From: Octopus sinensis
Lineage: Eukaryota
Reading direction: 5' to 3'
DNA: 64,000 nt
Assembly: GCF_006345805.1 (NCBI RefSeq)
Contig: NW_021831285.1
Span: 62,001-126,000, forward strand
Made by a program: the position numbers and the translations under genes. The notes beneath the pieces are model-generated. The model saw nothing but the letters and a program-made list of their open reading frames with translations. It searched no databases and was not told the origin of the DNA. Positions 2,950 to 59,150 of the stretch are shown here, in pieces. Position 1 is the stretch's first letter. Every line of letters begins with the position of its first letter.

Positions 2950-4181
2950 TCTCGATTCGTTTATGAAAGGGAAAATAATTGCGCTATACGACTTAAATAT
3001 GTCATATATTAAAATTTCTAAAGAAACCGATGTTCCATATTCAACAGTCGTAAATTTTATCAAGAAATACAATAAAACTGGATCATATGACCGCCAACAT
3101 GGTTCTGGAAGACTATCAATTTTGAATAATGTGCAAATTAATCATTTGGTACGCACATCAGAGGAAAATTCATCTTTAACTGCTTCTGAACTCTTTAATG
3201 AAATAGAAAAGTTTTCTGGAACACGTGTCTCGTCTCGAACCATAATATGAAATTTAAATAAAAATGGAATTTTCGGAAAGATTTGCAAAGAAAAAACCAC
3301 TTCTAACAAAAAAACACATGGTTTCCAGATTCGAGATCGTCCAAAAATTTCTTCAAATTTCAGACCATGATTTTAGATCAATAATCTTTTCTGATGAATG
3401 TATTTTTGAATTATTACCGATCCAAAAAAGAAAAATTGTGTATAGAAAAAAATTTGAAATGAATAAATTCGAAAATATTACTCCAACTGTCAAATTTGGA
3501 AAAGGTAAATTATGATGTGATAAAAAATTAGGGAAAGTCGTGGTGTGGGGTTGTTTTTCCTATCATGGGGTAGGCGATTTGGTATTTATAGACAAAACGC
3601 TTAATTCTGCAAAATATCAATCTATTTTGACCAATAATTTGCCATTTTCTGTACAAAAAATGGGGATTGTTGACTATATTTTTCAACAAGACAACGCTCC
3701 CTGCCATACATCAAAAATGATTATTCAATATTTTCGCGAAAAAAATATTAAAAAATTAGAATGGCCTTCGCAATCTCCGGATTTAAATCCGATAGAGCAT
3801 TTGTGGGCTTATATGAAGGTTCAAATTAGGCAAAGAAAAAATGAGAACATTCAGGCACTGAAGGAAAATCTATTAGATATTTGGAATTCTATTCCATCAA
3901 AAACACTTGAAAAATTAGTTGAGTCAATGAAAAAAAGGTGTTAGGAGATCTATTCGGCAAAAGGAGGTTATTCTACATATTAATCTCACAATAACCAAAT
4001 TTTATGCCAATGAAAGTCGTTGTTTTTTCCAAATTTCTTAGACAAAATTTCAAAATTTAAATAATTAAATTAATTTTTATCAATTTTATCAGATTTTAAA
4101 ATATATCTGAAGAAAAAATTAAATCATTCTTTGTATGAATGAAGTAAGTTGAAGATTCACCAATATTTATGTCGAGGGATG
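2950..4181 (+). mobile_element. Tc1 (DD34E) transposon, degenerate
   Basis: HTH region 2963-3250; IIFSDE, FQQDNAPCH and SPDLNPIEHLW with 34 residues between the second D and E; right terminus ..ATTTATGTCGAGGGATG followed by TA; stops/frameshifts present. Confidence 0.88.
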
Positions 4182-4185
4182 TACA

Positions 4186-4960
4186 TAAACACCCACAAAC
4201 AAGTGAAAGCAGCTGAGTTCAAAATCCAAAGAAACAAAATCATGTGAGAAATCAAGAAAAAATGTCAGAAAAATTATGAAACAGGGCTACAAAACTTTGC
4301 AAATGAAGTGGGAAAGTACAAAAACGAAGCGCAAATGTATGCATCTGTAAAGATGCTAGCGCGAAAGAAGAAATCGGAAAACCTAACAGTTTATGATGGA
4401 CTCGGAAGAACCATTTACAACAACCAGGAACGCACAGACACTATAGCCGACCACTTTGAAAAATATTTCAATTTTGAAAACAAAGAAACGCTTTACCCTT
4501 TCGATGGAATGCCCAGAAAGCTATCGCAAGAAATTACTTTAACGGAAGTTAAAAAATCTGTGACCAGACTAAACAACTCGAAAGCTCCAGGTCCAGATAA
4601 TGTTAATGCAGAGCTCATGAAATATGCAATCAGTAGAGTTAAGATGATAAAAATATTAAGGCCACTACTCGAGGAAGATTGCATCAGAATAATTCGTTAT
4701 TTACTCTCCTCCACTCAAATATTTATCCAGCTTGGAAATCAGAATTCCAGAGTATTCGAAACAAACAAGGGCACCCCCCAAGGAGACCCCCTATCTCCGG
4801 TCTTATTCATCGTATATCTGGAGGCGACCCTACGAGATGCCAGGAATAATATCACCAGACATATTACAGTAGTCATCTTCGCAGATGTCATAGATTTCAA
4901 GGCAACAGACCACCAATTATAAGGTAATATGGAAAAATTAGCCAACATTTTTGAAAAAAT
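4186..4960 (+). mobile_element. RTE-like LINE RT fragment with internal deletion
   Basis: KAPGPDNVNAELMK, GTPQGDPLSPVLFIVYLE, IFADVIDF; same family as 62490-63770. Confidence 0.8.
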
Positions 4961-4969
4961 TTCCCAACA

Positions 4970-6470
4970 AACCCATTAATGTTAGGGAAAAAGCCAAGAG
5001 CAGAACAAGAGGCTAATTAATGTGGGTTTGATTTCATTGTATAGGGTCATTTTATGAGACACCACATGTCTCTTCTTCGCATATACCCAAAAGAAAAAAT
5101 TACATCATAATTTCCACAAGTGATGTAACAAATCTTCTATCCTTCTGACTTTAACGTCATAAGCATCTTCGATTTTTGAATTTAAGTCCAATCCAAATGC
5201 CAATTTAATAGCAAATCTTCTGGTCTTTTCCAATTTTTCACAAAAATGCTACTTTCTTCGGACCTATACCATCCTTGATAGTCATATATCAAGAATGGCT
5301 CAATACATGTAGAATACACAAAAAGGAAAGTTTCAGGCTCCAAATGAAATCGAGTTAAAGATTTCAACATTCCTGTAGCTTTCTCTCTTCGTGTTTTGAT
5401 ATGATCCTTAAAAGATCCTCTTCGATCTATCGATACTCCGAGGTACTCCAATTTTCCAGAGTTTTTTATATCTCCTGTATTTACATATTCATCGATATTT
5501 TTTCTTTTACTTGCAATCCATGTGACTGTTGATTTTTCTCTTGACAGAGTCAACTCATTGTTTTGGCACCACCTCTCAATATTTTTTATATGGGTTTCTA
5601 CCCTTTTCCATGAAATTTGTTTACTTATGCTTGAATCAAGCACAAGAATGTCATCATCATAAATAATCATACGACTATTTATGCTCTCGGTTTTTGGTAA
5701 CTCACTCATTACACAATTGAAGAGTAGCGGGCTGAGAATTGATTCTGCGGAACTCCTCTTCGTAATTCAATTTTCTTAGAAATTAAATTTCCAACACGTA
5801 TATACGACCTCCTTCTTGAAAGAAAGTTTTCTATCCATAATAATGCGGTTCTCCCAATTCCTGCTTTTGATAACGTATCAAGAAGTCCGTAGTGCCAAAC
5901 ACTGTCAAAGGCCTTCGTTATATCCAAGCACGCTATTGTAAGAAATTCCTTTTTTCTCCTCGAACTATCGATTGAAGATCTTAGCTCTCTGAGACAATCT
6001 CCAGTCCCTTTTTTATGTCGAAAACCCAATTGATTGTCAGAGAGAAAATTATTATCCTCAACAAGCCTTGAGAGACGATTGAAGACAATTTTCTCCATAA
6101 TTTTCGAAATTGAGCAGATTAAGCTAATTGGCCTATAGCTATCTGCTTTTGACTTAGACTTTCTTTTTTTCACGACCATACGTACAATTGTTCGTTTCCA
6201 GGTCGACGGAACATGTCCAAAACTCCACGAAGAATTGTATAATATATTTAGTAATCCAACTAAAATCTGGTCCGCATTCTTGAAGATACTCATTGGGATA
6301 AAATCCCATCCTGGTGCTTTATTTTTGCAACCTTTTATCGCAGTATTTATTTCTTCTTGTGTTATAGGTTGGAGAATGGCTTTCGAGGCTCGGCCAAGAT
6401 AGTTGACAAAGGAGATCCTCCCATTCAAGAAGCTCGCTAGCCATTCAAGGGTTTCCGCATCAATGTCGCA
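4970..6470 (-). mobile_element. Jockey/I-group-like LINE RT, 5'-truncated and degenerate
   Basis: KAPGWDFIP, YRPISLICSISKIMEK, QLGFR, CLDITKAFDSVWH, GVPQ; frameshift near 5709; YDDD instead of YADD; same family as 43300-44690 and 57250-59150. Confidence 0.88.
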
Positions 6471-7139
6471 ATTCACAAGATTTCAGTCTTCTAAACAGAA
6501 TATACCCAAAAACTACATCCACATCTACTCCATCTGGAGAATATCCCATCAACTTCATCTCCTCCAAAATGTCAATGGGGAATGGACAGTGGTAGAACAG
6601 TCTCATCACTCCTTCATCACCACACTCCACGGAATAGTCCCCAGCTCTCGCCACCAACTGTTGGAATGCCTCCTTCGCCCGAGCAGACCACTGTCCCCCT
6701 TGGAGGAGACAGCAATAGTGAGCAAAGGCATTGAATCGGCAGTATTCCGAGGGCATCATATACATTTCCGACACTACGACAGTGGGAGTGTCCCCCGTAT
6801 CTACCCACGTGACCTCACATCGTGATTCCCCGATCACCTCATTCACAATTCCACGTCGGAAACTACCATCAGACCACAGACTTACCAATAATCTTCTCTG
6901 GCGTCGTTTTCCAGAAACATTGCGATCACGTAATCCCCCTCCTTCGGGTGGATACAGTGCTTAAACTTGGAGTACTGACGATACAAATCCACATTCATTT
7001 GTCTTAACAACCCCAACGAGTCGCATTTACGCGCATAAAACAATGACGGGCTCTCAACGTGACTAATCTCCACTGAAATGGTTCCTTCGAACGAAGTTGT
7101 CTTTGTCGATAAAGGTTGGGCGCTGTATTTTCCTAGCAA
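6460..7139 (-). CDS. Extended Tudor-domain protein (TDRD-like); 5' and 3' ends uncertain
   Basis: Removing a 23-nt GTAAG..TAG intron (6863-6885) joins SVEISHVESPSLFYA..GDYVIAMF..DYC to FRRGIVNEV..CEVTWVDTG..AFAHYCCL..WSARAKEAFQQLV, the extended Tudor pattern. Confidence 0.78.
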
Positions 7140-34249: not shown

Positions 34250-35028
34250 TCATTGTGAGTCAACATTAGAACTATCGAGAAGTGCAGTGACCTTCTCTAA
34301 CTGTCCTCTCAAAATGGCACACTCCTCACTGCAATATAATGCCAAACACGACCATTCATAATGTTCAGTCTGAATGGAAACATCGGTCACTTTTTTGGCA
34401 GGAAGACGACATTGCTCAGTCGAACTGTCAATGAGAGAAGTCTGTACAGTTCAAGGAGTGCAGACATCTCCTCTTTCTCAAAGATCAAGTTCTCTAACTG
34501 ACTTTGGAGTAGACCGACCACCTCGTTGTGAGCTTTGCTGACCCGCCTGATTTCGGTCTCAAATTCATCTCTCGTGTTCGAAATAAGGTATTCCTCTGAC
34601 TTGTACTTTATCACGTGGGTCAAGGGCACGAACAGTCCGGAATTGGCCCGACAAAAGAAATATCGGACTCCCGAAATGGACCCATCATGCTTCCCCGAGG
34701 GCTCTTCCAGTTCTATTCCACACCACTGTCCCTTCGCGAAGTTGGTGGGCCCGATGTACCTCACACGTCCACGTTTCCCGCTCTTAGTAAACACGAAGTC
34801 GTTTATCTACTCATAGAAAGTAGATCACACTTTTATATTCTTGAAATATGTTAAATTCTGAAAATCTTCGAAAGAAATATTCTTTTTTGTGATATGATAC
34901 GGCAGTGATGGACAACTACTGTCTTGGATTGGGTAGGATTTAGTTCTGGGGAATTCTTTATGGTGGGAATATCCGTTCTTTCCGTTTCTTGTAAGAATTC
35001 TGTCTCCATAATTTTTGTTCCCGCTCAT
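34250..35028 (-). CDS. Small CAP-Gly domain and coiled-coil protein
   Basis: GRVRYIGPTNFAKGQWCGIELEEPSGKHDGSISGVRYF..GLFVP; introns 34807-34830 (24 nt) and 34425-34447 (23 nt); ends ..SSNVDSQ*. Confidence 0.85.
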
Positions 35029-37635: not shown

Positions 37636-38800
37636 TTAAATCATAAGAAAACATCATTGTAAACACTCCCTCATCTAAAATATTTCTCAATCAAATAGAT
37701 AACAAATATGTGCTATAAACGCAGAGAATTTGCATGCATTTGGGAAATGAACATGATCAGCAATTTATAAAATCCTTTCTCTAAAAAGAATTAGATTTCA
37801 AGATCATAAATAGTCCTGTTGGTGGTGCACGGATGCCATCATTTAATAAAGATGGAAATCTATTAACTCTATTAAGTAGATAAACTTTTGTTGGGCACAA
37901 ACCCCAAACTAATTAAATGTTAGTAAGAAAGTCAAAAGTGAAGACGGGTCTGCATCTTTTTAATGGGTTAGTTATCAAAGACATCGTATGTTTCTACCTC
38001 GCTCCTACCCCAGATTACATCACACATTTTCGATTCTTCATGTTTTTCTTTCAAATGTTTCGTCAAGGCCTGAATTCAGATCAAGAACTTATACGAGTAA
38101 AGTAGCGACCTTAGCATACCAGCTGCTTTATCGCCCTCCGTCTCTATATTCGCTGAAATATCCATAAGATCAGAAATGATCCGGTTAGTCACCATAAGTA
38201 TGTCAGAGTGGTCCACGGATGTCATCATTTCATAAAAAAATATTAACTCTATTAGTAAATTGGTGCTCAGAATTTAAATAAAATCATATTATAGATTCAA
38301 ATAGTGGTGCATATATCATCATTGCTTTAAAAAAACAATTAAATAGATAACAAACTAAAGTGAATAAACTAGATAGCGTTGTTGTTGTTGTTGCATAACC
38401 CCGGTCTCACATTAGGGTATGAGACCGGCGGCTAGCAGAAACAACAGCGCCTTCGCGGGTTGCTCCCAAAGGACCTCGGGGGAGTGGACAGCAAATTTCC
38501 TGCGGACAGGGAGGAGAACAGGGCAGCGGAAAAGGTGGTCAGTTGAGTGATCTTCGGCACAGCAGAGGTTGCATACCGGGGAGATCACGGCGTTCAATGA
38601 GTGAGCGTAGGAGTTAGTGAGTGGTGGTGGCCCGAGCGGAAACGAGCAAGGTTGATCTTCGGAACGCTCCAGAAGCAATTCGGAGGGGTGAACTTCCGGA
38701 GGGAGTTTGTTGAGGACAGAGTTAGGCTTCAGCCTTAGAATGGACGACGTTGAAGTGAAGTCGTGGATTTTTTTCATTGGCTGTGAACATTGGTTTAGGC

Positions 38801-39984
38801 CAGAGGTTTCCAAATGGGGAGGCGCGCCTCCCTAGGGAGGCGTTGACTCGTGTCAAGGGAGGCGCGAAAAGTATTTCAGAAACATTTTTAGAAAATTATA
38901 TCTATGTAAAAAACGTGACTATATTCCGATAATAAGAGTTATAATTTAAAAATTATATTTTTTCAAAAATTTATTTAATTTATTAGACAATTAAATAATT
39001 TTAACACATGAATAAATTCTTGAGTGGTTGCAAAAGAAAATTCACGAATAATAAAGATTTTGACGATGGTTCAAAAATCAAAATGATTGGAATATAATCA
39101 ATACCACTGATTAGAAGGGTGTTTGAACTCAAAGATCAAGTTGCAGATTTTCTTGATGAAAATGATATTGAAGATGCAAAGTTGTTCAGGGATGATGACT
39201 TTATTGTCAAATTTGCCTATTTAGTTGACATTTTTGGGAATTGAGTATATTGATAAATCAATGCAGGGACCACAACTACATTTATTCTCTCAAAAGGACA
39301 AAATAAAAGCATTTATGAAAAAATTGGTATTATGGAAATCAAATATACAAAAAAATATCTATGACATGTTTCCACTTTTAAACACCTTTTGCGCCATAGT
39401 GAACATTGAAGCAAACAAAGACATATTTGCTGAACATTTGGATTGTTTGTTGAAGCATTTTGCTCACTATTTTAAAGATCTCGACTGTAAAATGTTCGAA
39501 TGGATACAGAATCCATTTATTGATGAAGAAGATAATCAATTTGCATTGACAACTTTTGAAAAAGAAAAATTGATAGAATTGTCATGCGATACATTATTGA
39601 AACAAAAATTTGAGAGGAACCGCTAATTTCTTTTTGGTTGAATGTAAGAACGGAATATGAAATTTTGTCGAATAAAGCAATGAAAGTTTTGTTGCCATTT
39701 GCTACTTCATATTTATGCGAAACTGGATTTTCTGCACTAGCTGCAATTAAATCTAAATATCGAACTCGTTTAGTAGTGACTAATGAGCTAAGAGTAGCAC
39801 TCTCTGCGATGACACCAAGATTGAAAAACTTTGCGCCAAGATGGAAAAAAATTATCTCATTAACTTTTTGTTTTAAAAAATGTTTTTGATAAAATAATAA
39901 TTGTATTATATTATGGAATATAAAGGGAGCGCAAGATTGTACTTTTTCTCTAAGGAGGCGCGTAAAAAAAAGCTTGGAAACCTG
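38801..39984 (+). mobile_element. Non-autonomous hAT/Buster inserted into the LINE ORF
   Basis: TIRs CAGAGGTTTCCAA / TTGGAAACCTG; TSD GTTTAGGC at 38793-38800 and 39985-39992; transposase C-terminal half (LPFATSYLCETGFS). Confidence 0.92.
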
Positions 39985-42712
39985 GTTTAGGCCATTGATT
40001 TTGGCAAGTACCCGGGAGTATAGTTTGGCAGGCGTGTTCTTCAAAGCACGGCCGTTGTCATTTAGCGTGTTTAGGGCAGTGCAAGGGTGGTAGAATTTTC
40101 GCGAAGCGAATAGGAATTGTGCTCCTCTCATGTTGAGATGTTCCTCTATCGGGAGGAGGTTGGTTTCACAGTGCAGATGGTCGATGGGTGTTGATTTCAG
40201 GCACCCGGATATGATGCGCATGGCTTGGTTTTGAATTGATTGGAGAGCCAAAGAGGAGCTCATAGATAGACAGGGAGCCCAACTCGGACTCGCGTAGCTT
40301 AGGACAGGGCGAATGTATTGTTTATACACACGTTTGAGAAGTGGTTTCTGCGCACCAGTGATGTGACCACTTATTGCTTTCAGGATATTTGTACGCCTGT
40401 TAGCCTTGCCAGAGATCTTCGAGACATGTTTGTTGAAGGACATCGTTGGGTCGAAGGTTAGTCCGAGAACAGTGGGGTGTTTTGATAGTGGGAGAACAGA
40501 GCCAAAGAGAGATAGGATGGGATGTATGTTTGATTGTCTTCTGTCGGAAGATAATAGGGTGACCGAGGACTTGGAGGACGAGGCCTCGAGCCTGTTTTCT
40601 CTGAGCCAATTCTCAACGGAGTGGAGTTGTTGCTGAAGGTTGAAGGAGGCAGCTTTGTAGTCTTCGTGTTTTGAGGCAATAATAATGTCGTCAGCGTAAG
40701 ATAGTGTCAAGTTGTTAGGGTCGTTTGCCGGGAAGTCATGCAAGTAAAGATTGAACAGGGACGGAGACAGCACGGAGCCCTGCGGTACCCCATTTGGAAG
40801 ATAGCGTTGTTTGGAACAATGGTCCATGAGGGAGACGTAGCCCATGCGGCCCGATAAGAAGTTAGCAAGCCAGGATTTGTAGTTTGAGTCTAGGCCGGTC
40901 GTGAGAATTTTCTTGGTGAGACCGCAACGGGGGACGCTGTCAAAAGCTTTAGATATGTCGATGGAAGCTAGAACTGTTCGTTTAGGGGGCCTCTTCTCAT
41001 TGAAGCCGTCCAGGACGAACTGGGAAAGCGTTGTTAAGTGAGTGGTTGTTGAGTGCAGTGGTTTGAAGCCATGTTGGGTGTGGGATGTTGGTAAGTGCTT
41101 CGAGACTCGTGAAAGGATTAGTCTTTCGAGGATTTTAGATAGCGTGCACAAAAGAGAGATTGGGCGGTATGAGCTTGGAATGCCAGCCGGTTTGTTCGGT
41201 TTGATTAACGGGATGATACGTGATTTTTTCCAAAGAGATGGAATTTCGTTTTTTACAACGGAATTGTTGAAAATAGACACTATAGCGTTGATGGCGTTAG
41301 GGCCAAGTCTTTTAAGGTGGTGGATAGAAATGTTGTCAGGCCCCGTGGCGGGGGAATTCTTCGAGTTTTTTATACACTGCGAAACTTCGTCTGCAGTGAA
41401 AGGCGGTAAGGATTCCGTGCGAGGTAAGCTCCTCCGAGATTTGGCGACCTTCCGATCGTTTTTGTTTGAGGTTTTGTGGCTTAAGGAGGCGTAGTAGTTC
41501 ATGAGCGAGTTTGCCTCCTGAACCGGATTCAGTGGGATGTTTGAGTTAGAAGTGGCAGATTCATGGGACTTGGGCTTTTCATAAATCAGATCATTCATGT
41601 CCTTCAGGGTCTTCCAGATTTTGGAGCTGTTAGATCTGTAGTCGATTGAGGTGATAAATTCGGTCCACTTAGAATCTGCGTGCAGGTTAATGGCAGCGGT
41701 GATTTGTTTGTTTAGGTTAGCCAATTCAATGGAGGACTCGGCAGAGTGCCTTGATGTCTGTTTCAGCTTGTTGCGAGTCTTTATGAGGGATTTCACTTCG
41801 TGGCTGTAATTAGGGCGGAACTTTTCAATTTTTCCTTGGGGGATGAATTTTTTGGCGGTGGAAATGATGAGAGCATTAAGGTGATTGACTGCTGCATCAG
41901 TCGAGCGAAAGCTGTTGATGTTGAAATCGTTCAGAGAGTTTTCTAGGGCAAGGCGGTATTCGTCCCAGGAAGCTCTTTTGTAGTTAGTATAACAGCGGCG
42001 TTGTAGGTCAATGTTAGATTTTAGAGCATTCTCGATTATGATTGGGTTATGGTCACTGGTTAGGTCATAAACCACCTTCCAGGCGGTAACGGAGGCCAGA
42101 ATAGGAGTACACAGTGAGATGTCGGGAGAGGAGATTGCGTCGCCATATCTTGACGGGGTTCTGGTATGGGATGAGGAGTTGTTGAGAATGACCAGACCGT
42201 CAAGTTGATCAAGTATAAGAGTTCCTCTTGAGTTGAGGCATTGATTTTTTAGCCAAATCGGGCTCTTTGCGTTCATATCGCCGCAGATAAAGACATTACT
42301 GAGGGACTGGAGGTTTTGTATTGAGGGGTCCAACCGTGAGGACAGGATGAACACGGAGGGATGTACATGTTGATCAGCCTTCTGGTTGAGCGCCCTGTAG
42401 AGACCGTTATAGCCGTCAGCTCAATTACAGGGTCGTTATCGATTAGTGTGTAAGCTTGTGATGTACAGTTAGAGAAAGGGATTGATTTTCTGATAAGGTT
42501 AAAAGGCCCCCGCCATTTACGGAGTTCGGTCTGTCTCGCCGGATGTATGAGTAACCCGGGAAATCGGGCAGGCGGTTTTTGGGCGAGAGCTTCGTTTCCT
42601 GCACCAAAGCAATGTCCACGTCGTACTTCTCCATGAAGGAACAGAGTTCAGTGGTCTTGTGGGCGATCCCATTAATGTTTACTTGCAGGATACGAAGTAG
42701 GTTCTTCCTGGC

Positions 42713-42790
42713 GGGTCCAGGGTTTTGTTCGATGTCTCCGGAGAGGAGAAGGGCGAGTTGGGAGTGTAAAAGAGAGGTCCTTGGGAGCAG
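42713..42790 (-). other. 2A-like StopGo (ribosome skipping) peptide
   Basis: ..TSLLHSQLALLLSGDIEQNPG|P in frame with the APE domain; core DIEQNPGP at 42736-42713. Confidence 0.88.
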
Positions 42791-42857
42791 CGGCTTCGCG
42801 CCTGCTCTGCTGCCACCGACGTCACGGAAGGTATCCGATCCGACAGGGGGGGGGGGT

Positions 42858-42932
42858 TGTGGGTCTTTTGGTAGTTAATTCCATGAGAAACTATCATTTG
42901 CCACCACGAGAAGGTGACCCACATCGACAAAC
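42858..42932 (-). ncRNA. HDV-like self-cleaving ribozyme at the LINE 5' end
   Basis: GUUUGUC GA UGUGGGUC ACC UUCUCGU GGU GGCAAAU GA UAGUU..AACUA C CAAAA GACCCACA: P1 7 bp with G1-U37 wobble, P2 8 bp, P3 3 bp, L3 UUCUCGU, P1.1 (U22-A39, C23-G38), P4, J4/2 CAAAA. Confidence 0.9.
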
Positions 42933-43299
42933 AAATAGCGTGATTAATACTAGATAGCGTGATTAATATTATAAATAAAATTGAACTAATTCATATTTCT
43001 AATTTAATTATTTTTATTCAAATTTCAGCTTTTTACCAGTAGACTTGAATTATTTTTAAAAAATAATAGTTTTGTTGTTTCTTAACGAGAATCCTCAATA
43101 CTTTTTTCTTGCAGCAACTCGATTTTTTAACTCCTCAATATTCAATTTAATATAATTGTTGCTTTCTGAATAAAAAGTTAGTGGACTCAATATCACTCGG
43201 AACATCAACAAGTGGAGAATATCGATTCCATATTCTCTTTAATTCATTAACAAGTCCTTCATTTTATATATATTCCTTTACTCTTCATAACCACGGAAG

Positions 43300-44690
43300 A
43301 GACGTTCGAAGCAATCAGAGGTTGCATGAACAACGCTCCTGGACTTGACTTCATCCCTATGGAGGTGTTCAAGAAGGCACCCGGATGCTTGCTTCGTATT
43401 CTGGTAAAACTATTCAATGCCAGTTGGGACAATGGTCACGTCCCATCTAGCTGGAAACGAACAATCGTCCGAATGATCCCAAAACCTGGAAAACCAAATA
43501 CGCAGGCAGGAAGTTATAGGCCAATTAGCCTTATCTGCACAACGTCGAAGATAATGGAAAGAATTATTTTCAATCGTTTATCGGCTTACGTGGAACAAAA
43601 TAATATACTCGCGGAAGAACAGTGGGGTTTTAGACCTGGTCGATCAACCGGTCACTGTTTCTCGCTTCTTGAGAAAGAACTGTCTCGGGCCAAACTGCAT
43701 AAAGCCTTCCTAACGGCGGTCTGCTTGGACGTCTGCAAGGCCTTTGACAGTGTCTGGCACTTGGGGTTGCTAGATAAAGTAGCGGAGTTGGGTGCTGGGC
43801 GAAAAACTGTCAGATGGCTAAAGGGCTTCTTGTGCGAGAGAAAATCGTTCATTCGTTGTGGAAATCTGTTATCGAAGGCCGTGAATCTGAGGAGAGGTGT
43901 TTTTCAGGGATCGGTTCTCAGCCCCTTGCTCTTCAATATATTTCTGGCCGACGTCCCGAAACCACATTTTCCTACGAGCAGACTAATTATCTACGCGGAC
44001 GATATCTTGGTTACGGATGTCTCGAAGTGGGGACCCCGACACAGAAGAAGGTTGTCCTGGAGCAGACTAGAACCGTACTTGGAGGAACTTGAAATCTGGT
44101 GCAATGGTAAAGGCTTGAATCTCGCTCGGGACAAAAGTACCATTTGTTGGATTTCAATGGGTCGTGACAAAAAACCGACTTTCGAGGATTATGGGAACCT
44201 GATTATATCGAAGAACCTACGTTACCTGGGAGTAACTATAGACCCCACCGGGTCATACAAACCCCATGTGCATGCAAAGCGGAAACAAGGAGCGAAAATC
44301 CTAAAAGGACTGAGGCGTTTTTGTCTAAGCGCAGAAACGTTTCTACACATCTACCAGACTTGTGTTCAGCCACTAATAATCTATGGTTTGGAGGGCTGGT
44401 ACCAAACTGATGAAAGGGACCATCTAATCGCCAAACTCGAAAAAACCAGACGATTTGCCATCAAACTGGCATTCGGCCTGGAGCTCAGCAGTCCGCTGGA
44501 AGACCTGCATGAGCGGAGTGTTGACACGATAGACGCGATCCTGGCAAAAACTCGAATTCGCTGAGGGAGATAAGATAGTCTCCCGGGGCAAAACCGAAGT
44601 TGAGACCTTCGTGGCTCTCGTTATCAAGCCCCCTAAGCTCTAATTCCTCGGCCACTTTTCTTTTGGAGCTATTGTATTAAATAAACCATA
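43300..44690 (+). mobile_element. Jockey/I-group-like LINE, 5'-truncated, open RT ORF (43326-44564)
   Basis: APGLDFIP, YRPISLICTTSKIMER, QWGFR, CLDVCKAFDSVWH, QGSVLSPLLFNIF, YADD, LRYLGV. Confidence 0.92.
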
Positions 44691-48315: not shown

Positions 48316-49986
48316 TTAAAGCTCATCAGAAATTCCCTTCAAGAGTCCATCAGTGGAATGTGCTTCCAAAAAGGTCATGAAGGATTTCAAATCTCGCTCA
48401 GCCTAAAACCTGATTCAAAATCCACTACTTGATACTGAATTGGATTTCTCATGTCATTCCGAGACTTGTAGTAAAACGTGGGAAACCTAAAAAATCAGAC
48501 CCAACACCAACCCCGAGACAAGATAGGGTGCGGGAACGTCATTCGCCGTGGCATCCATTCTGGCAATAACGACAGAATCATTATCCTTCAACTGCCAAAT
48601 GACACAAGGGACTAACTCTGGTGGCCAGTTCTTCGTAGATTGGAACTACAGACTTACAATGCCCACACCAAGGTGCATAAAACTCAATAAGCACATCCTT
48701 GTCCTGATTTACCACCTCATCAAAGTTAAGAGCCACCACTTCCTGAAATAATAACAAACACAAACCCTAAGTCCCGGGACCTTGTCGGAGACGGGGATTG
48801 GCTGAGATTTGACATATGGCTTTAAATTTCCTGCCAGAAAATCGTTGACGAATTTAGTAATGTTAACGGCACTAAAGACTTCGGTCATCAAATATTTGTC
48901 TCCGTTATTAGTGTGGACAAGCACAGCCACGGAATACTCGTCGGGGAGACTCAGCTCGTGTCTGAACTCGGCAATGTCAGCGAAACTGCAGGAAATGTGA
49001 TCTTTCAGTCCATTCTGAAACATGACCTTAAATAATCTAGAGATTAAAAGGAATAGCACGACCTATTTCTATAATAATTCATCATTTTAAGACTGTTGAC
49101 CAAATCCATTGAAAAATAGGCGGTTAGAACAGGCATTTCGAACAAATGTCGATTCTTCATAGTCTTATGTCCACACAGTCCAAGACTACGCTTAATTAAT
49201 AACAAAAAACAGCGAATTTTTGAGCCACTTCTCCAAAGAATCTCCGTCAGCAGTAAACACATATTCGGAAGGTTCGAAAGCGGTTGAGTATATGTGAGAC
49301 CTCGAAAATACAATTCCACTAAAAATTGACTAAAAAAGTACAAACGAATCACGATTTGCATATTCACAAACATTTTTATTTTTTATGTAATAAAATCGAA
49401 TGTATCTGGTCAACTCCGAGCGGGAAGCGTCCAAAAACTCGTCCAAATTTCCATCGCTGCAAACAAAACCTAAAAATAAAAAATTTCCCCAAACCAAAGA
49501 CCCTAGTAACATCCGGATTGTTGGCCGTTATATATTCCGCGATTTCCGTTAATTCTGTGACAGGGGGAAGAGTGTTCTCGGTAATCCAATCTAAAAAGGC
49601 CCGATCTGTTCGGGCACCGTCATAGTTTTGTAGTTTTTCCCCATTTTTGAAATGTATTATGGTGGGGTACCCCTGTACATTTTGTTTCTGGCAAATATCG
49701 GTCTCTGTTGTGCAATCGACCTGGAACATGAATGTTTTGGATAACCAAAGCAAGTCGAGCGGGGAGACCATTGGAGATCACATCTTCCCCCACTTTAAAA
49801 AAGGTTGGCTTGAAATTTTTGCAGTGTCCACACCTTAAGGGTGAGTTAGACGATTATCTACCAGGGGGCGTAGAACATGATTATAGAGTTGGGGTTATCA
49901 CTTAGAAATTTGTCGAATTTTTGCTTTTTAAGGTCCGGAACTGAGGCAGAAATAAATGATAGCAAAAATGCAAACAGAAAAGGCAT
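48316..49986 (-). CDS. PDIA3: Protein disulfide isomerase, ERp57/PDIA3-like, about 10 micro-introns
   Basis: Signal peptide [14 protein letters not shown]; two WCGHC sites; GYPTI and GFPTF; C-terminal SDEL*; introns 20-28 nt (e.g. 49834-49861, 49721-49745, 49470-49494, 49319-49345). Confidence 0.88.
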
Positions 49987-50319: not shown

Positions 50320-51930
50320 GAAATCTCAGTTTTTGGCTCGTATAAGCTTATACCGTTTGTGGTATTTGGTGACCAGTCCTAGCTCGTTTGCAAGGAGGTC
50401 ATACTTCCTCCTTTTCTTCACTTCCACTATCTGCAAACGGTCTAGGCACGTGATGCCTACCTCCACGATAACAATCTCTTCCGTGACCTTATCATGGACC
50501 ACAATATCGGGTCTGTTGTGCTGAACAACAATCGAGGTGCGTATGGGCACCCGCGAGTTCTTACACACCGATTGAACTCGATGGGTTCGCAACTTTCTGA
50601 ACCGCCTCAAGCCATACTTATTGCAGAGCAAAAGATGGAGGGACCTCACCACCTCGTTATGCCTCCATGTGTAATCATGGTAAAGCATACTTCCGCACTT
50701 CGTGGCTAAATGATCAACGGTCATTGTCCTACTCTTACAGTGGTTACACTCACTCTTTCCGTTGACCATTAAAAAGTTTATGTCCTGCAAATATGAGAAC
50801 AACCCTTCAGGACAGCCACGTTGAGACAACGATACGTCAATGTGTGACTCAGTCCACGTCCTAGCTGCCCGCGAGACAAGTACAATCTCTCCTTATTGCT
50901 TGCCAATACGTGGACGTGATTCTCTCGGAGTACTCTTCGGACAATAAGGTCCATTTAATCGTACTCACTCGGCTCGAATTCGATCAGGCCAACGTAGTAG
51001 TTTAGCAATGAGATGGCGTACTCGTTCAAGGCATGAAATAAGTTCCGTGCATTGAGCCGAGTTTTACATAACATTTCTGCCCTACTACGCACACCCTCCA
51101 CTACACACTTTCTCGTTTCGGGTGTGATTAATGAGGCTGGGCTCTCAACCACACCAAGATACTTATATCCTTGGTGTTCCTCCAAGACTTTGAGTAGGTC
51201 ACCGTACACAGGGGTGTTAGTCGCCGACTTGTTGTAGTTGAGCTTCAACCCCACGGCCTTCATGAAACCTTCCAAGACTTTGCCCATCGAGTGGAGAATC
51301 TCTGAAGACCGAGCAAACAGTTTGATGTCGTCTATGAACATGAGATGGTTGGTGCTAAAACATCCTCCTTCATGTTCGATCAACATTTGTTCGAATTGGG
51401 CAGTGAGGACTTTACTCAGCGGTTCTAGGCAGAGGATAAACAGCAGCGGAGACATTCTGTCGCCCTGTAATATGCCCCTCTCTAGCTTAACCTCGCCTAT
51501 ATCGCATTTGTTGTAGTGTAGATGCAGGTTCCACCTGTCCATCACAGTTGCAACAAATTTGATAAACCACGAAGGCAACTTGAGCCTTCGCAGACACTCA
51601 ACGAGGTAGGCATGATCAACCGAGTCATATGTCTTCTTCAGATCCACCCACATCGACACTAATGAGTTTCCGTGGGCTCTCGCAAGTCATTTGTTGATCA
51701 ATGCCTGCTCCTTAGCTCCCTGGCAATCCCGCCGAGTACCTAACTGGTTCTCGGACAGAATCTCATTCACCTCCACGAAATTTCTGACCTCAGTAGCCAC
51801 CACCTTAGTCATCAACTTGTGCAGGTTGGGCATACAGGTTATCGGACGATAATCTGTTGGAGCGGAAGGGTTATCTACTTTAGGAATCAAATAAGTTACC
51901 CCAGTACATAACCACTCTGGAATCGAGCCA
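50320..51930 (-). mobile_element. Second R4/Dong-like RLE element, internally deleted
   Basis: DYRPITCMPNLHKL, VDLKKTYDSVDH, GILQGDRMSPLLF, FIDDIKLF, TVDHLATKCG..WRHNEVV, RPDIVVHD, KYDLLANEL. Confidence 0.88.
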
Positions 51931-57249: not shown

Positions 57250-59150
57250 TAAGAATTTTATGAAAGGAAATGAAAATCCAATTCTTATTGGAGACTGCAA
57301 TGCCACACATTTTAAATATGGATGCGTGAAATCTAATCGAGATAAAAAATGTTTACTTGAAATAAAGGAATCTTCGAACTTTCAAATTTTCACTTCTGAA
57401 GAGCTTAACCATTTTCAGCAACAAATTGGTGATAGATTAGGATTGTTTATTGTTGGCAATTAGGATTGTTTATCTTCCACAAACGATGAAATTACAAATT
57501 GGATCAATTTTCGTTGAGCATGTATTTATTGGTTATAATATCAACAACATTGATTGGAATCACTTTAATTTTTATGTGGCAATGAAATTGGCAAATGCTC
57601 GAAAATTAAAAATATAAAATCGTGATAAGATCAATGATCTGGATGAAAGAATAAGAAAAGTTATTACAAATTATTTGGAGAATTATGGAAACAAGAGGTT
57701 TCTCTTCTCATAAAAAATCGATTGATAAATGAAGAGCAATCTAAACTTTTTCGTAAAAAAATCTTGAACATAGTAAAGGAGAACTCTAAACTCTCTCATA
57801 AAATCCGAATTTTTGGAAACTTTTCTTAAAGATGAGTTTCGATAAAAAAAAAGAGATAAAACTCAGGTCAAATGAAAACAATCTAATTCCGAATGGTGAA
57901 GTACCTGAGAAGTTAAGAGAACAGCTAGCTCGGATTCAAGAGGTGGACCCTTTGTCGGTGATTTCACGGACTATACAAAATGGTATGTGTCTTTAGAAAA
58001 CGCCATCGCTTACAGAGGAACCATTATGTGGAGCAATTTCTATGGAAGAAATCATGTTAGCAATAAATGGATGTAAAAATAAATCTCCCGGTTTGGATTA
58101 CATACCGATGATTATCTTCAAAAAGGCGGAAACGCCTTTATTATATGAATTATAGAAATTATTTAATTCTTCGTGGAGTACCGGGCATGTTCCCGAAACG
58201 TGGAAGAGGACAATTGTTCGGATGATCTCAAAGAAGCGCAAGCCGAGTTCGGATCCTGCTGAATTACAGGCCAATTAGCCTCATATGCGCAATCTCCAAA
58301 ATCATGGAAAAATTATTTTTAACAGACTATCAACTTATATCGAGGATAATCAATACCTTTTGCAAGAGCAATGGGGTTTTTGGCGTGGCAGGGGCGCTGG
58401 AAATTGCTTTTCGCTAATAAAGGAGGCTATTTATACTGCACAAAGAAAAAAAGAATATCTTACTGCCAGATTTCTAGACATATCAAAAGCGTTTGATAGT
58501 GTCTGGCATGCCGGTTTATTACAAACTTTACACAATTTCAATATCAAAAAGACGGCCTTAGTTTGGATGAAGAGTTTCCTCTCGAAAAAAATCTCGCTTA
58601 TGAGAGGAGTTCCACAGGGATCTGTCATCAGTCCACTTTTATTTAATTGTGTCGTGTGCGACATTCCTAAAGTGGATCATCCTAACATGGAGATGATCAT
58701 TTGTGCAGATGATATTTTACTTATGGATCTTTCCATGAGCAAATCAATATTATGGAAAAGAACTCTTGGTCATATTGAAGATGGTTTAAAGATAAAGGCT
58801 TGTCTCTATCTTTTGAAAAAGTACTGTCCTGGATTGGTAAGAGTAGAAGGATACGTGATTTTTGTATTGATACTTGAGTAATAAAATCTGAGAAAAATCT
58901 AAAATATTTCGGAATAGTTGTAGATGAATCTGGATCTTTTAATAATCATATAATCAGCAGAACCATTGCTGATCTATGGATTACGGGAATGTTTCAAAAG
59001 CAGCGAGGGAACGAAACACATAAAGCTTTTGGATGAAATACGGAGATTTTTAATTAAATTGGCGTATAGTTTGGATTTAAAATTCAAATTAATCACAAAG
59101 TTGAAGGGATCTTACGATCCATTAATAAATTATTGCATCACATAAGTAAA
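57250..59150 (+). mobile_element. Old Jockey/I-like LINE (APE and RT), heavily degraded
   Basis: ILIGDCNATH (APE); KSPGLDYIP, QWGF, DISKAFDSVWH, GVPQGSVISPLLFN, CADD. Confidence 0.8.

What the first reader, a model, noticed from the sequence alone, without database searches (positions are those of the whole stretch)
42858..42932. Textbook HDV-like self-cleaving ribozyme defines the 5' end of a full-length LINE
Seen in sequence (minus strand, 75 nt): P1 GUUUGUC/GGCAAAU with a G1-U37 wobble, P2 UGUGGGUC/GACCCACA, P3 ACC/GGU, L3 UUCUCGU (compare CPEB3 UUCACGU), a 2-bp P1.1 in which U22-A39 replaces the usual C-G, P4 UAGUU/AACUA, and J4/2 CAAAA holding the candidate catalytic C. The element's unique sequence stops at G1. 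The likely ORF AUG (42897) lies inside the ribozyme core. Established: HDV-like ribozymes process the 5' ends of R2 and of trypanosomatid L1Tc/ingi. Inference: this element self-cleaves out of host transcripts; I know of no report of it in this lineage.
Basis: partly seen in the sequence, partly recalled or inferred. Interest (0 to 1): 0.85.

Follow-up and report, generated by a model that had tools for sequence, protein, structure and literature searches.

The report
HDV-like ribozyme heading a LINE
The 75 bases at the 5' end of a decayed LINE retrotransposon fold into the double-pseudoknot shape of hepatitis-delta-like self-cleaving RNAs, and distant relatives of this LINE keep the same fold through many compensating changes, so it is a real but already familiar kind of element.

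Summary

Topology alone is weak evidence: a loose structural search finds about a dozen such folds in the window. Rfam finds nothing. Covariance models trained on relatives do not score the site significantly.

Comparison with relatives settles it. At least 18 LINE relatives (30-41% protein identity, from metagenome contigs) carry the same fold just upstream of a 2A peptide motif.
- P1, P2, P4 and the P1.1 pseudoknot covary: 97% of cells paired against 62% after shuffling.
- The conserved bases match the published HDV-like descriptor: L3 U..CG and J4/2 C-A-A-A.
- Two 94%-identical copies begin their similarity exactly at G1.

A descriptor derived from the relatives hits the window once, at this site. 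About 0.02 hits per window are expected by chance.

In the window, a 12-bp target-site duplication brackets the element. Only duplicated target DNA plus TT separates it from G1.

The LINE spans its full length but is dead: it has frameshifts and a 1.2-kb foreign insert.

Best reading: a 5' self-cleaving ribozyme that frees the LINE RNA from read-through transcripts, coupled to an ORF that starts inside the ribozyme and to a 2A peptide. This is a new member of a known kind. Cleavage itself was not tested.

The parts
42858..42932 (-). HDV-like ribozyme, 75 nt; predicted cleavage 5' of G1 (between 42933 and 42932)
   Evidence: Sequence read. Only hit in the window of the descriptor derived from relatives. 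Top hit of covariance model R2, but only E=0.28.
42926..42932 (-). P1 5' strand GUUUGUC (nt 1-7); pairs with 42896-42902
   Evidence: All P1 columns covary in relatives, and G.U is the commonest closing pair.
42896..42902 (-). P1 3' strand GGCAAAU (nt 31-37)
42916..42923 (-). P2 5' strand UGUGGGUC (nt 10-17); pairs with 42858-42865
   Evidence: 8 perfect bp, -10.65 kcal/mol. All six shared P2 columns covary.
42858..42865 (-). P2 3' strand GACCCACA (nt 68-75)
42903..42915 (-). P3 ACC/GGU enclosing L3 UUCUCGU (nt 18-30). L3 has the conserved U at position 1 and C-G at positions 5-6.
   Evidence: L3 is U..[C/A]G in the relatives. This matches the published descriptor U19/C23/G24 (PMC6326823).
42894..42895 (-). 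J1/4 G38-A39, the 3' half of P1.1; pairs with C23 and U22 (42910-42911)
   Evidence: P1.1 covaries across relatives: AU 10, GC 4, UA 2 for one pair and CG 15, UA 2, UG 1 for the other. L001 and L009 share the window's UC/GA type.
42872..42893 (-). P4 hairpin UAGUU...AACUA (nt 40-61). An alternative 7-bp hairpin, 40-46/51-57, is more stable.
   Evidence: The base of P4 covaries in relatives.
42866..42871 (-). J4/2 CCAAAA. The candidate catalytic C is C63 (42870), or possibly C62 (42871).
   Evidence: Relatives have C-A-A-A-(U) here, nearly invariant. This matches the published C-R-R-A descriptor.
42922..42924 (-). First AUG after the cleavage site (+9, at the J1/2-P2 border), frame 0
   Evidence: Five relatives have their in-frame AUG at +8 to +12.
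42895..42897 (-).
42846..42856 (-). C11 homopolymer between the frame-0 AUGs and the frame-2 2A/APE ORF; the likely site of the frame-breaking indel (inference)
42713..42757 (-). 2A-like 'StopGo' peptide motif LALLLSGDIEQNPGP; the N codon lies 134 nt after the ribozyme's 3' end
   Evidence: All 18 ribozyme-bearing relatives have NPGP 115-244 nt downstream.
42037..42712 (-). AP-endonuclease domain, broken by two frameshifts (near 42500 and 42330) and by stops
40528..41193 (-). Reverse transcriptase domain (Pfam RVT_1, E=1.9e-35)
   Evidence: tblastn to P0001 runs from 42327 to 40006.
38770..40005 (.). About 1.2 kb of foreign DNA interrupting the LINE; not part of the element. Inverted-repeat arms at 38823-38838 and 39947-39962.
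   Evidence: LINE homology jumps from 40006 to 38768 over about 16 residues of P0001. Inverted repeat found.
38412..38768 (-). C-terminal Cys/His domain of the LINE protein, through the stop codon
38378..38411 (-). Short 3' UTR and (AAC)5 microsatellite tail, the 3' end of the element
42949..42960 (-). 5' copy of the target-site duplication ACGCTATCTAGT
38368..38379 (-). 3' copy of the target-site duplication ACGCTATCTAGT (its AC overlaps the tail)
42933..42948 (-). 16 nt between the 5' duplication and G1. ATTAATCACGCTAT is an exact second copy of target DNA at 42954-42967; it is followed by TT. This is junction filler, not element sequence.

Best explanation
The 75 nt at 42932-42858 (minus strand) are an HDV-like self-cleaving ribozyme. 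It forms the first module of an APE-type, single-ORF LINE.

Proposed mechanism, with each step marked as shown or inferred:
(1) The element has no demonstrated promoter and is transcribed as part of longer host or read-through RNA (inferred).
(2) The nested double pseudoknot folds as it is transcribed. C63 in J4/2 acts as the general acid, and the chain is cut 5' of G1. The LINE RNA is left with a 5'-OH and the whole ribozyme retained (inferred from the fold family; the fold itself is shown by covariation).
(3) The protein-coding frame is already open inside the ribozyme, with an AUG at +9. The uncapped, ribozyme-headed RNA is translated unconventionally. A leader peptide of about 60 residues is released from the endonuclease-RT protein by the 2A motif (the arrangement is shown; the function is inferred).
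(4) Reverse transcription primed at the target runs from the (AAC)n tail to G1, so every full-length daughter copy starts at the cleavage site and inherits an intact ribozyme (shown for the L002/L036 pair; consistent in the window).

The window copy is a dead insertion. Its ribozyme helices are still all paired.
For: Fold and conserved bases:
- All helices are present in the window.
- L3 U..CG, the G1.U closing pair, a 2-bp P1.1 and J4/2 C-A-A-A meet the published HDV-like descriptor (PMC6326823).

Comparative evidence:
- 18 relatives at 30-41% protein identity carry the same architecture. They were fetched without reference to the RNA, by protein look-up and by an endonuclease-based scan (found).
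- On the curated alignment, 97.1% of cells pair, against 62.4% after shuffling (0 of 500 shuffles reach it). The covariation score is 0.967 against 0.247. Sliding the partners gives 33-48% pairing. 19 of 21 pairs show double changes.
- P1.1 covaries as AC/GU, GC/GC, UC/GA and AU/AU, and GU/AC in L026-28.
- The reading frame differs between members across the conserved bases, so coding constraint does not explain the conservation.

Position:
- NPGP lies 115-244 nt downstream in all 19 elements.
- L002 and L036 are 94% identical from G1 onward and unrelated upstream. They also differ by a compensatory U-A to C-G change in P2.
- In the window, a 12-bp duplication flanks the element, and only duplicated target DNA plus TT lies before G1.

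Specificity:
- The relatives' descriptor hits the window once, at this site, with 0.02 hits expected by chance.
- R2, built without the window, ranks the site first among 128 kb of searched sequence.

Precedent: R2, L1Tc/ingi, RTE and Baggins ribozymes (PMC3774820, PMC3185411, PMC4035085, PMC6765202).
Against: - No cleavage assay was possible.
- Rfam has no hit at gathering score, nor at E<=10 locally.
- Covariance models of the relatives do not score the window site significantly: R1 6.5 bits, R2 12.8 bits with E=0.28, and R3 does not list it at E<=10.
- The window's P1 is 7 bp, whereas all relatives have 6.
- P1 (-3.6 kcal/mol) and P4 (-0.8 kcal/mol) are weak.
- The minimum-energy nested fold uses a competing pairing, 27-32 with 59-64, that sequesters the candidate catalytic C.
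- The upstream bases UAUU can extend P1 into G38-A41 and compete with P1.1. This effect is reported to lower activity in L1Tc and R2 (PMC3185411).
- The curated alignment was parsed by hand to maximise pairing. The descriptor was written after I had seen the window and allows a 7-bp P1.
- 14 other related loci with a 2A motif and upstream sequence were followed up. Three of them (L026-28) showed a variant fold; the other eleven showed none.
Confidence: 0.82

Rival explanations
1. Chance resemblance: an AT-rich 64-kb window will contain some sequence that can be drawn as an HDV-like double pseudoknot.
For: A structure-only descriptor finds about 12 distinct sites in the window. The fold-energy z-score is only -1.39. 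There are no Rfam hits, and the covariance-model scores are not significant.
Against: - The site sits in sense orientation at the very 5' end of a LINE.
- Distant relatives of that LINE carry the same covarying fold at the same place.
- The family descriptor is expected to hit 0.02 times per window, yet it hits exactly here.
Confidence: 0.03
2. A conserved 5' RNA structure that is not, or is no longer, catalytic. On this view the double pseudoknot is kept for translation initiation on an uncapped RNA, for binding the element's own protein, or as part of an internal promoter. The 5' end would then be set by transcription initiation rather than by cleavage.
For: - The ORF is open through the ribozyme in 15 of 18 relatives, and AUGs lie at +8 to +12.
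- HDV-like ribozymes of R2 and L1Tc are reported to aid translation and to bind R2 protein, and the same 77 nt of L1Tc are an internal promoter (PMC6765202; PMC3383444 abstract).
- Homology starting at G1 would also fit a transcription start at G1.
Against: The bases that are conserved are exactly those needed for catalysis, not merely for the fold: the G1.U/C closing pair, L3 U..CG, P1.1 and J4/2 C-A-A-A. These extra roles accompany cleavage in the known cases rather than replace it.
Confidence: 0.1
3. The family ribozyme is real, but this particular copy is a poor or inactive ribozyme: a fossil in a dead LINE, in an unfavourable flank.
For: - The element has frameshifts, stops and a 1.2-kb insert.
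- The ribozyme is 44% G+C, against 50-65% in relatives.
- P1 and P4 are weak, and there are a competing pairing and a competing P4.
- The upstream UAUU can extend P1 over P1.1, and a slipped P1 register is available.
Against: Every helix is still fully paired and every conserved base is present. P4 is the most variable part of the fold in the relatives.
Confidence: 0.3

Closest known systems
L1TcRz / Pr77 ribozyme of trypanosomatid L1Tc-ingi LINEs
   Same: - An HDV-like ribozyme occupies the first ~77 nt of an APE-type, single-ORF LINE.
- Cleavage is at the element's first nucleotide.
- A 2A peptide sits near the N-terminus of the ORF just downstream. The commonest L1Tc motif, DIEQNPGP, is the same as in the window (PMC3185411, PMC4035085, PMC3708506).
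- Upstream bases that extend P1 interfere with P1.1.
   Different: - L1TcRz has a 1-2 bp P1.1, and its 77 nt double as an internal promoter.
- L1Tc carries an RNase H domain, which Pfam does not find here or in the closest relatives.
- Its hosts are kinetoplastids.
- I did not compare the RNA sequences, so homology versus convergence remains open.
R2 retrotransposon ribozyme
   Same: It has the same fold and the same job: it releases the element's 5' end from a co-transcript. The ribozyme is retained on the RNA, and a role in translating the uncapped RNA has been proposed (PMC3774820, PMC6765202).
   Different: - R2 has a restriction-like endonuclease and is specific for 28S rDNA, where it is co-transcribed by Pol I.
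- Its ribozyme is larger (~184 nt) and in some species cuts inside the upstream 28S sequence.
- It has no 2A peptide.
HDV-like ribozymes of RTE and Baggins LINEs (drz-Agam-2 and others; Ruminski et al. 2011)
   Same: They sit at the 5' termini of promoter-less APE-type LINEs that insert non-specifically and are transcribed from host or neighbouring promoters (summarised in PMC6765202).
   Different: They belong to different LINE clades, and no 2A coupling is reported. The primary paper was not available to me. I therefore cannot exclude that a member of the present family was already listed there or in Webb et al. 2009.
HDV and CPEB3 ribozymes (the type members of the fold)
   Same: - Nested double pseudoknot with a 7-bp P1 closed by G1.U.
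- 3-bp P3 and a 7-nt L3 with U..CG.
- 2-bp P1.1.
- Catalytic C at the start of J4/2 followed by purines (descriptor in PMC6326823).
   Different: - P1.1 here is U-A plus C-G instead of two C-G pairs.
- The context is a LINE 5' end, not a viral rolling circle or an intron.
- The Rfam models of these families do not match.
Twister-variant ribozyme of Perere-3 (RTE) in Schistosoma mansoni
   Same: It is a functional analogue: a 5' ribozyme on an APE-type LINE, with target-site duplications next to the cleavage site, and with translation of the cleaved, uncapped RNA (PMC8501958).
   Different: It has an unrelated ribozyme fold, and there the duplicated target supplies one strand of P1.

Membership tests
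HDV-like self-cleaving ribozymes (fold family) | Nested double-pseudoknot order P1-J1/2-P2-P3-L3-P3'-P1'-J1/4(P1.1)-P4-J4/2-P2' | tested here: met
   Read directly from the sequence and found by the descriptors. The topology is kept in 18 relatives with 97% pairing.
HDV-like self-cleaving ribozymes (fold family) | G at +1 closing P1 with U or C (G1-Y) | tested here: met
   The window has G1.U37. In the 18-row alignment A6, whose window row shows only the inner six P1 pairs, the closing pair is G.U in 9 rows and G-C in 4. The descriptor is taken from PMC6326823.
HDV-like self-cleaving ribozymes (fold family) | 3-bp P3 and an L3 of ~7 nt with conserved U at position 1 and C-G at positions 5-6 | tested here: met
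   The window has ACC/GGU with L3 UUCUCGU. U1 is invariant and G6 nearly invariant in the relatives.
HDV-like self-cleaving ribozymes (fold family) | 2-bp P1.1 between L3 positions 2-3 and J1/4 | tested here: met
   The window has U22-A39 and C23-G38. This is not the canonical pair of C-G pairs, but both positions covary in relatives: AU/GC/UA and CG/UA/UG, and GU/AC in L026-28.
HDV-like self-cleaving ribozymes (fold family) | J4/2 beginning with the catalytic C followed by purines (C-R-R-A) | tested here: met
   The window has C62-C63-A-A-A-A. Relatives have C-A-A-A-U/G/C, with the C and two A's at least 90% conserved.
HDV-like self-cleaving ribozymes (fold family) | Mg2+-dependent self-cleavage 5' of G1 giving 5'-OH and 2',3'-cyclic phosphate, abolished by mutating the catalytic C | not testable with these tools
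   This needs in vitro transcription and a cleavage assay.
Rfam HDV-type families (HDV_ribozyme, CPEB3_ribozyme and related models) | Score at or above the family's gathering threshold | tested here: not met
   There is no hit in the window at gathering score and none at E<=10 in 42700-43100. None of 17 relatives hits at E<=1 either. The element is therefore not a member of any curated Rfam sequence family, although the fold class fits.
The 5' ribozyme family of this 2A-bearing LINE group (defined here from relatives) | Matches a structural and sequence descriptor derived from the relatives | tested here: met
   The descriptor gives one hit in the window, at 42932-42858 minus, with 0.02 expected per shuffled window. 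Caveat: the descriptor was written after I had seen the window, and it allows a 7-bp P1.
The 5' ribozyme family of this 2A-bearing LINE group (defined here from relatives) | Significant score with a covariance model built from relatives only | tested here: inconclusive
   With R2 the site is the best hit in the window but reaches only 12.8 bits, E=0.28. R1 gives 6.5 bits. R3 does not list it at E<=10. The models cannot encode P1 together with P2 and P1.1, and they also score divergent true members poorly: 8-18 bits for L001, L009 and L003.
The 5' ribozyme family of this 2A-bearing LINE group (defined here from relatives) | Located at the element's first nucleotide, 115-244 nt upstream of an NPGP 2A motif, in sense orientation | tested here: met
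   In the window the N codon of NPGP lies 134 nt downstream of the ribozyme's 3' end. The target-site duplication and junction filler place the element's start at G1, or at most 2 nt upstream.

The most novel reading that the evidence does not exclude
The ribozyme, the start codon inside its core and the 2A peptide could form one ancient, inherited 5' expression cassette. It would be shared by a wide group of single-ORF LINEs and be homologous to the Pr77/L1TcRz-2A arrangement of trypanosomatid L1Tc/ingi. In this reading the cleaved ribozyme itself serves as the ribosome-loading platform for an uncapped mRNA whose ORF begins 8-12 nt from the 5'-OH end.
Probability: 0.3. Interest if true: 0.6.

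Novelty: new member of a known kind. Interest (0 to 1): 0.45.

Why it matters
The finding adds a well-supported, covariation-backed family of HDV-like ribozymes that the curated RNA library does not detect. The family is present in many uncultured eukaryotes.

It also ties three things together in one module across at least 19 divergent elements:
- 5' self-cleavage;
- an ORF that is already open inside the ribozyme;
- a 2A 'StopGo' peptide.

That gives a convenient natural series for asking how ribozyme-terminated, uncapped LINE RNAs are translated. It also allows a test of whether the L1Tc arrangement is ancestral or convergent. In practice, the family alignment could seed an Rfam-type model and improve annotation of LINE 5' ends.

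It does not change the general picture. HDV-like ribozymes at LINE 5' ends are established.

Tried and rejected
- Rfam, at gathering score and at E<=10: nothing, for the window or for the relatives.
- Single-sequence folding: the minimum-energy nested fold is not the HDV fold and its energy is not unusual.
- A very permissive descriptor produced unusable numbers of hits. A stricter structure-only descriptor still gives about 12 sites per window, so I dropped topology as evidence.
- MAFFT alignments of the full ribozymes misaligned P1, J1/2 and P4. I therefore used a hand-parsed, condensed alignment for pair counting.
- Three covariance models: R1 was too narrow. R2 ranked the site first but without significance. 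R3 used the P1/P3/P4 set on a condensed alignment and missed the window site.
- Host identification failed. A CAP-Gly exon gave no hits. A neighbouring RT ORF gave only hits of about 30-40% identity over most of the query, from mixed animal taxa. Exact-sequence look-ups were not on record.
- LINE clade assignment failed. No reference set was available, the supplement of PMC3708506 is not held, and Ruminski 2011 and Webb 2009 are not held. The closest hits that carry an RNase H domain (27-29% identity) hint at the I/Ingi side rather than CR1, but this is not established.
- L015 62-160 (R2 E=1.4) could not be parsed into the fold and was left out.
- I considered that the 16 nt before G1 might be an uncleaved leader copied from the parent locus. 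I rejected this because 14 of them are an exact copy of the target DNA at the insertion site itself.
- Disclosure: early in my private working I began to recall the delta-virus ribozyme's letters from memory as a yardstick. The comparison rests on the published descriptor only (PMC6326823).
Full report
**1. What is in the sequence**

Read on the minus strand, 42932-42858 is GUUUGUC GA UGUGGGUC ACC UUCUCGU GGU GGCAAAU GA UAGUU UCUCAUGGAAUU AACUA CCAAAA GACCCACA.
- P1, 1-7 with 31-37: seven pairs, closed by G1.U37, with a second wobble at U6.G32.
- P2, 10-17 with 68-75: eight Watson-Crick pairs.
- P3, 18-20 with 28-30.
- L3, UUCUCGU.
- P1.1, U22-A39 and C23-G38.
- P4, 40-44 with 57-61.
- J4/2, CCAAAA.

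The order of the strands is that of the nested double pseudoknot of HDV-like ribozymes.

**2. Is it more than chance on its own? No.**

- Rfam finds nothing in the window at gathering score. In 42700-43100 it finds nothing relevant at E<=10.
- The pseudoknot-free minimum-energy fold keeps P2 but pairs 27-32 with 59-64. It also uses a different P4. Its energy is ordinary (z = -1.39).
- A structure-only descriptor finds about a dozen distinct sites in the 64 kb on both strands, mostly AU-rich. That descriptor asks for a 7-bp P1, P2 of at least 6 bp, a 3-bp P3, a 7-8 nt L3, a P4 hairpin and a C in J4/2.
- In this copy P1 (-3.6 kcal/mol) and P4 (-0.8) are weak. P2 (-10.65) carries most of the stability.

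**3. The surrounding element**

Downstream on the same strand lies an APE-type LINE.
- A 2A-like motif, LALLLSGDIEQNPGP, sits at 42757-42713.
- An endonuclease domain follows it, then a reverse transcriptase (Pfam RVT_1, E=1.9e-35), then a C-terminal Cys/His domain ending at the stop at 38412.
- The 3' end is a 19-nt UTR and an (AAC)5 tail.

The copy is dead.
- The reading frame changes twice inside the endonuclease, near 42500 and 42330, and there are stops.
- LINE homology jumps from 40006 to 38768 across about 1.2 kb of foreign DNA with inverted-repeat ends.

**4. Where the element starts**

- The 12-mer ACGCTATCTAGT occurs at 42960-42949 and again straight after the tail at 38379-38368. 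This is a target-site duplication.
- Between the 5' copy and G1 lie 16 nt. ATTAATCACGCTAT is an exact second copy of the target DNA at 42967-42954. It is followed by TT.
- This is junction filler derived from the target, not element sequence. Element-specific sequence therefore begins at G1, or at most two bases earlier.
- This agrees with a template RNA whose 5' end was the predicted cleavage site. The step from observation to mechanism is an inference.

**5. Relatives**

- A protein search with the frame-joined LINE protein found only distant relatives, at most 41% identity, all from metagenome or run assemblies. Several have an N-terminal 2A motif.
- I fetched six encoding contigs. A scan of metagenome contigs with an endonuclease alignment gave 72 more loci. 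Neither route uses the RNA.
- Just upstream of the 2A motif, 18 of these loci carry the same architecture. They are L001-L006, L009, L018, L020, L024, L030, L036, L039, L040, L041, L050, L051 and L066.
- A typical member, L050 6-80, reads GUCUCG AAC GAUGCG GCC UACACGU GGU CGAGAU GU CGACAGCU...AGCUGUCG CAAAU CGCAUC.
- A further variant occurs in L026-L028.
- Of 14 other loci with a 2A motif and upstream sequence, these three showed that variant and the other eleven showed no such fold. They may be truncated or more divergent.

**6. Covariation**

I used a hand-parsed, condensed alignment of the window plus 17 relatives (A6, 54 columns).
- 97.1% of the pair cells form standard pairs, against 62.4% after shuffling partners among sequences (0 of 500 shuffles reach it).
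- The covariation score is 0.967 against 0.247.
- Sliding the 3' partners by 1-3 columns gives 33-48% pairing.
- 19 of 21 pairs show changes on both sides (table).
- Every P1 and P2 column has three to five pair types.
- The hallmark P1.1 pseudoknot covaries: AC/GU in most, GC/GC in L020, L024, L030 and L051, UC/GA in the window, L001 and L009, AU/AU in L004, and GU/AC in L026-28.

The conserved unpaired bases are U at L3 position 1, C-G at L3 positions 5-6, and C-A-A-A at the start of J4/2. These are exactly the fixed positions of the published HDV-like descriptor: G1-Y, U19/C23/G24, and C-R-R-A with the C as general acid (PMC6326823).

The conserved bases are read in different frames in different members, so coding constraint does not explain them.

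Caveat: I parsed the alignment by hand to fit the fold, which inflates the pairing percentage somewhat.

**7. The 5' end in relatives**

L002 and L036 come from different samples. They are 94% identical over 401 nt starting exactly at G1 and are unrelated upstream, with 150 nt of flank available in each. Within the ribozyme they differ by a compensatory U-A to C-G change in P2.

**8. Formal tests of the window site against the family**

- A descriptor using only features seen in relatives hits the window once, at 42932-42858 on the minus strand.
  - Its features are: P1 of 6 or 7 bp; J1/2 of 2-5 nt; P2 of at least 6 bp; a 3-bp P3; L3 starting with U and with G at position 6; a 2-bp P1.1; P4 of at least 4 bp; and J4/2 starting (N)C-R-A.
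  - In 400 dinucleotide-preserving shuffles of the window the mean is 0.02 hits, and 8 shuffles have one.
  - I allowed the 7-bp P1 knowing the window has it. All relatives have 6.
- Covariance models, which cannot hold P1 and P1.1 together with P2, are inconclusive.
  - R1 (6 seeds) gives 6.5 bits.
  - R2 (13 relatives, helices P2/P3/P4) makes the site the best hit in the window and aligns G1 to model position 1, but reaches only 12.8 bits, E=0.28.
  - R3 (18 relatives, helices P1/P3/P4, condensed alignment) does not list it at E<=10.
  - The same models score divergent true members poorly, at 8-18 bits.
- No relative matches Rfam at E<=1 either.

**9. Coupling to translation**

- In all 19 elements the NPGP motif lies 115-244 nt after the ribozyme's 3' end. 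In the window the distance is 134 nt.
- In 15 of 18 relatives the 2A frame has no stop back through the whole ribozyme.
- In five relatives (L002, L003, L024, L050, L039) the most upstream in-frame AUG downstream of G1 is at +8 to +12, at the J1/2-P2 border. Six relatives have no in-frame AUG at all.
- The 2A motif is in frame 2, which has a TAA at 42877-42875. A one-base loss or a two-base gain is needed to join the frames. The C11 run at 42856-42846 is the obvious place (inference).
- The AUG at +9 therefore fits the family better than 42897 as the ancestral start.

**10. Likely activity of this copy**

All helices and conserved bases are intact. Four things argue for reduced activity:
- P1 and P4 are AU-rich.
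- An alternative P4 and a 27-32/59-64 pairing compete with the ribozyme fold.
- A slipped P1 register (AUUUGUU from 42936) is possible.
- The flank UAUU can extend P1 over G38-A41, displacing P1.1. This effect is described for L1Tc and R2 (PMC3185411).

I put about 0.6 on detectable cleavage by this copy in vitro. I put more on the GC-rich relatives.

**11. Comparison with what is known**

- HDV-like ribozymes at LINE 5' ends are established for R2 (PMC3774820), L1Tc/ingi (PMC3185411, PMC4035085), and RTE and Baggins (Ruminski 2011 as summarised in PMC6765202).
- A twister variant does the same job in Perere-3 (PMC8501958).
- 2A peptides near the N-terminus of single-ORF LINEs are known in the Rex1, Crack, L2, L2A, CR1 and Ingi clades (PMC3708506).
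- The combination of ribozyme plus 2A is, as far as I could read, described only for L1Tc.
- I could determine neither the clade of the present family nor the host. I could not read Ruminski 2011 or Webb 2009. Prior listing of a member therefore cannot be excluded.

**12. Verdict**

- It is a new member of a known kind.
- Interest is moderate: the finding is solid and gives a neat ribozyme/AUG/2A module, but it would not surprise a specialist.

Noticed in passing
window 42713-42757 (-): A canonical 2A 'StopGo' motif (LALLLSGDIEQNPGP) sits directly before the endonuclease domain. Every ribozyme-bearing relative has the same arrangement, 115-244 nt after the ribozyme.
   Followed up: yes
window 42933-42967 (-) and 38368-38392 (-): The 5' junction is unusual. 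The 12-bp target-site duplication ACGCTATCTAGT is followed by a second exact copy of 14 nt of target DNA (ATTAATCACGCTAT) plus TT before the element's first base. At the 3' end, an (AAC)5 tail abuts a target that reads ...AATCAC, which suggests priming by microhomology. I did not work out how the 14-nt duplication arose.
   Followed up: partly
window 38770-40005: About 1.2 kb of foreign DNA interrupts the LINE between its RT and C-terminal domains. It has imperfect inverted-repeat ends (38823-38838 and 39947-39962) and two plus-strand ORFs (39225-39626 and 39638-39889) with no Pfam match. They look like a DNA-transposon remnant, but I did not confirm that.
   Followed up: partly
window 43326-44564 (+): An intact 412-aa reverse-transcriptase ORF of a different LINE lies head-to-head about 400 bp upstream of the ribozyme. 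Its best database relatives are only about 30-40% identical over most of the query and come from mixed arthropod, mollusc and reptile sources.
   Followed up: partly
window 4308-6476, 50955-51659, 58285-58881, 3540-3944: The window holds further retroelement RT fragments and a DDE_3 (Tc1/mariner-type) transposase fragment, so it is repeat-rich. None of these shows the ribozyme.
   Followed up: partly
window 34387-34794 (-) and 49376-49771 (-): These are probable host exons: a CAP-Gly domain (E=1.7e-24) and a thioredoxin/PDI-like domain. The CAP-Gly exon shared almost no 5-residue words with 5.8 billion database proteins. That suggests a divergent or poorly sampled host, which I could not identify.
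   Followed up: partly
L002 323-360, L036 250-290, L041 131-165, L066 126-160, L050 81-110, L039 344-375, L006 104-135: Just after the ribozyme, many relatives have a short GC-rich hairpin, for example CUCCCCGAAAGGGGAG or CCAUCCCCAAGAUGGAGG. In some it contains an in-frame AUG. The window has only the C11 run at the corresponding place.
   Followed up: no
L051 29-124: One relative carries a ~23-nt insertion inside L3 of an otherwise regular ribozyme. Either L3 tolerates an extra hairpin or this copy is inactive.
   Followed up: no
L026 233-354, L027 216-337, L028 194-315: This is a divergent variant of the same fold. It has P3 GGG/CCC, L3 UGUCCGC, P1.1 GU/AC, a ~95-nt P4 region, J4/2 ending CAGAG, and an AUG at +8.
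   Followed up: partly
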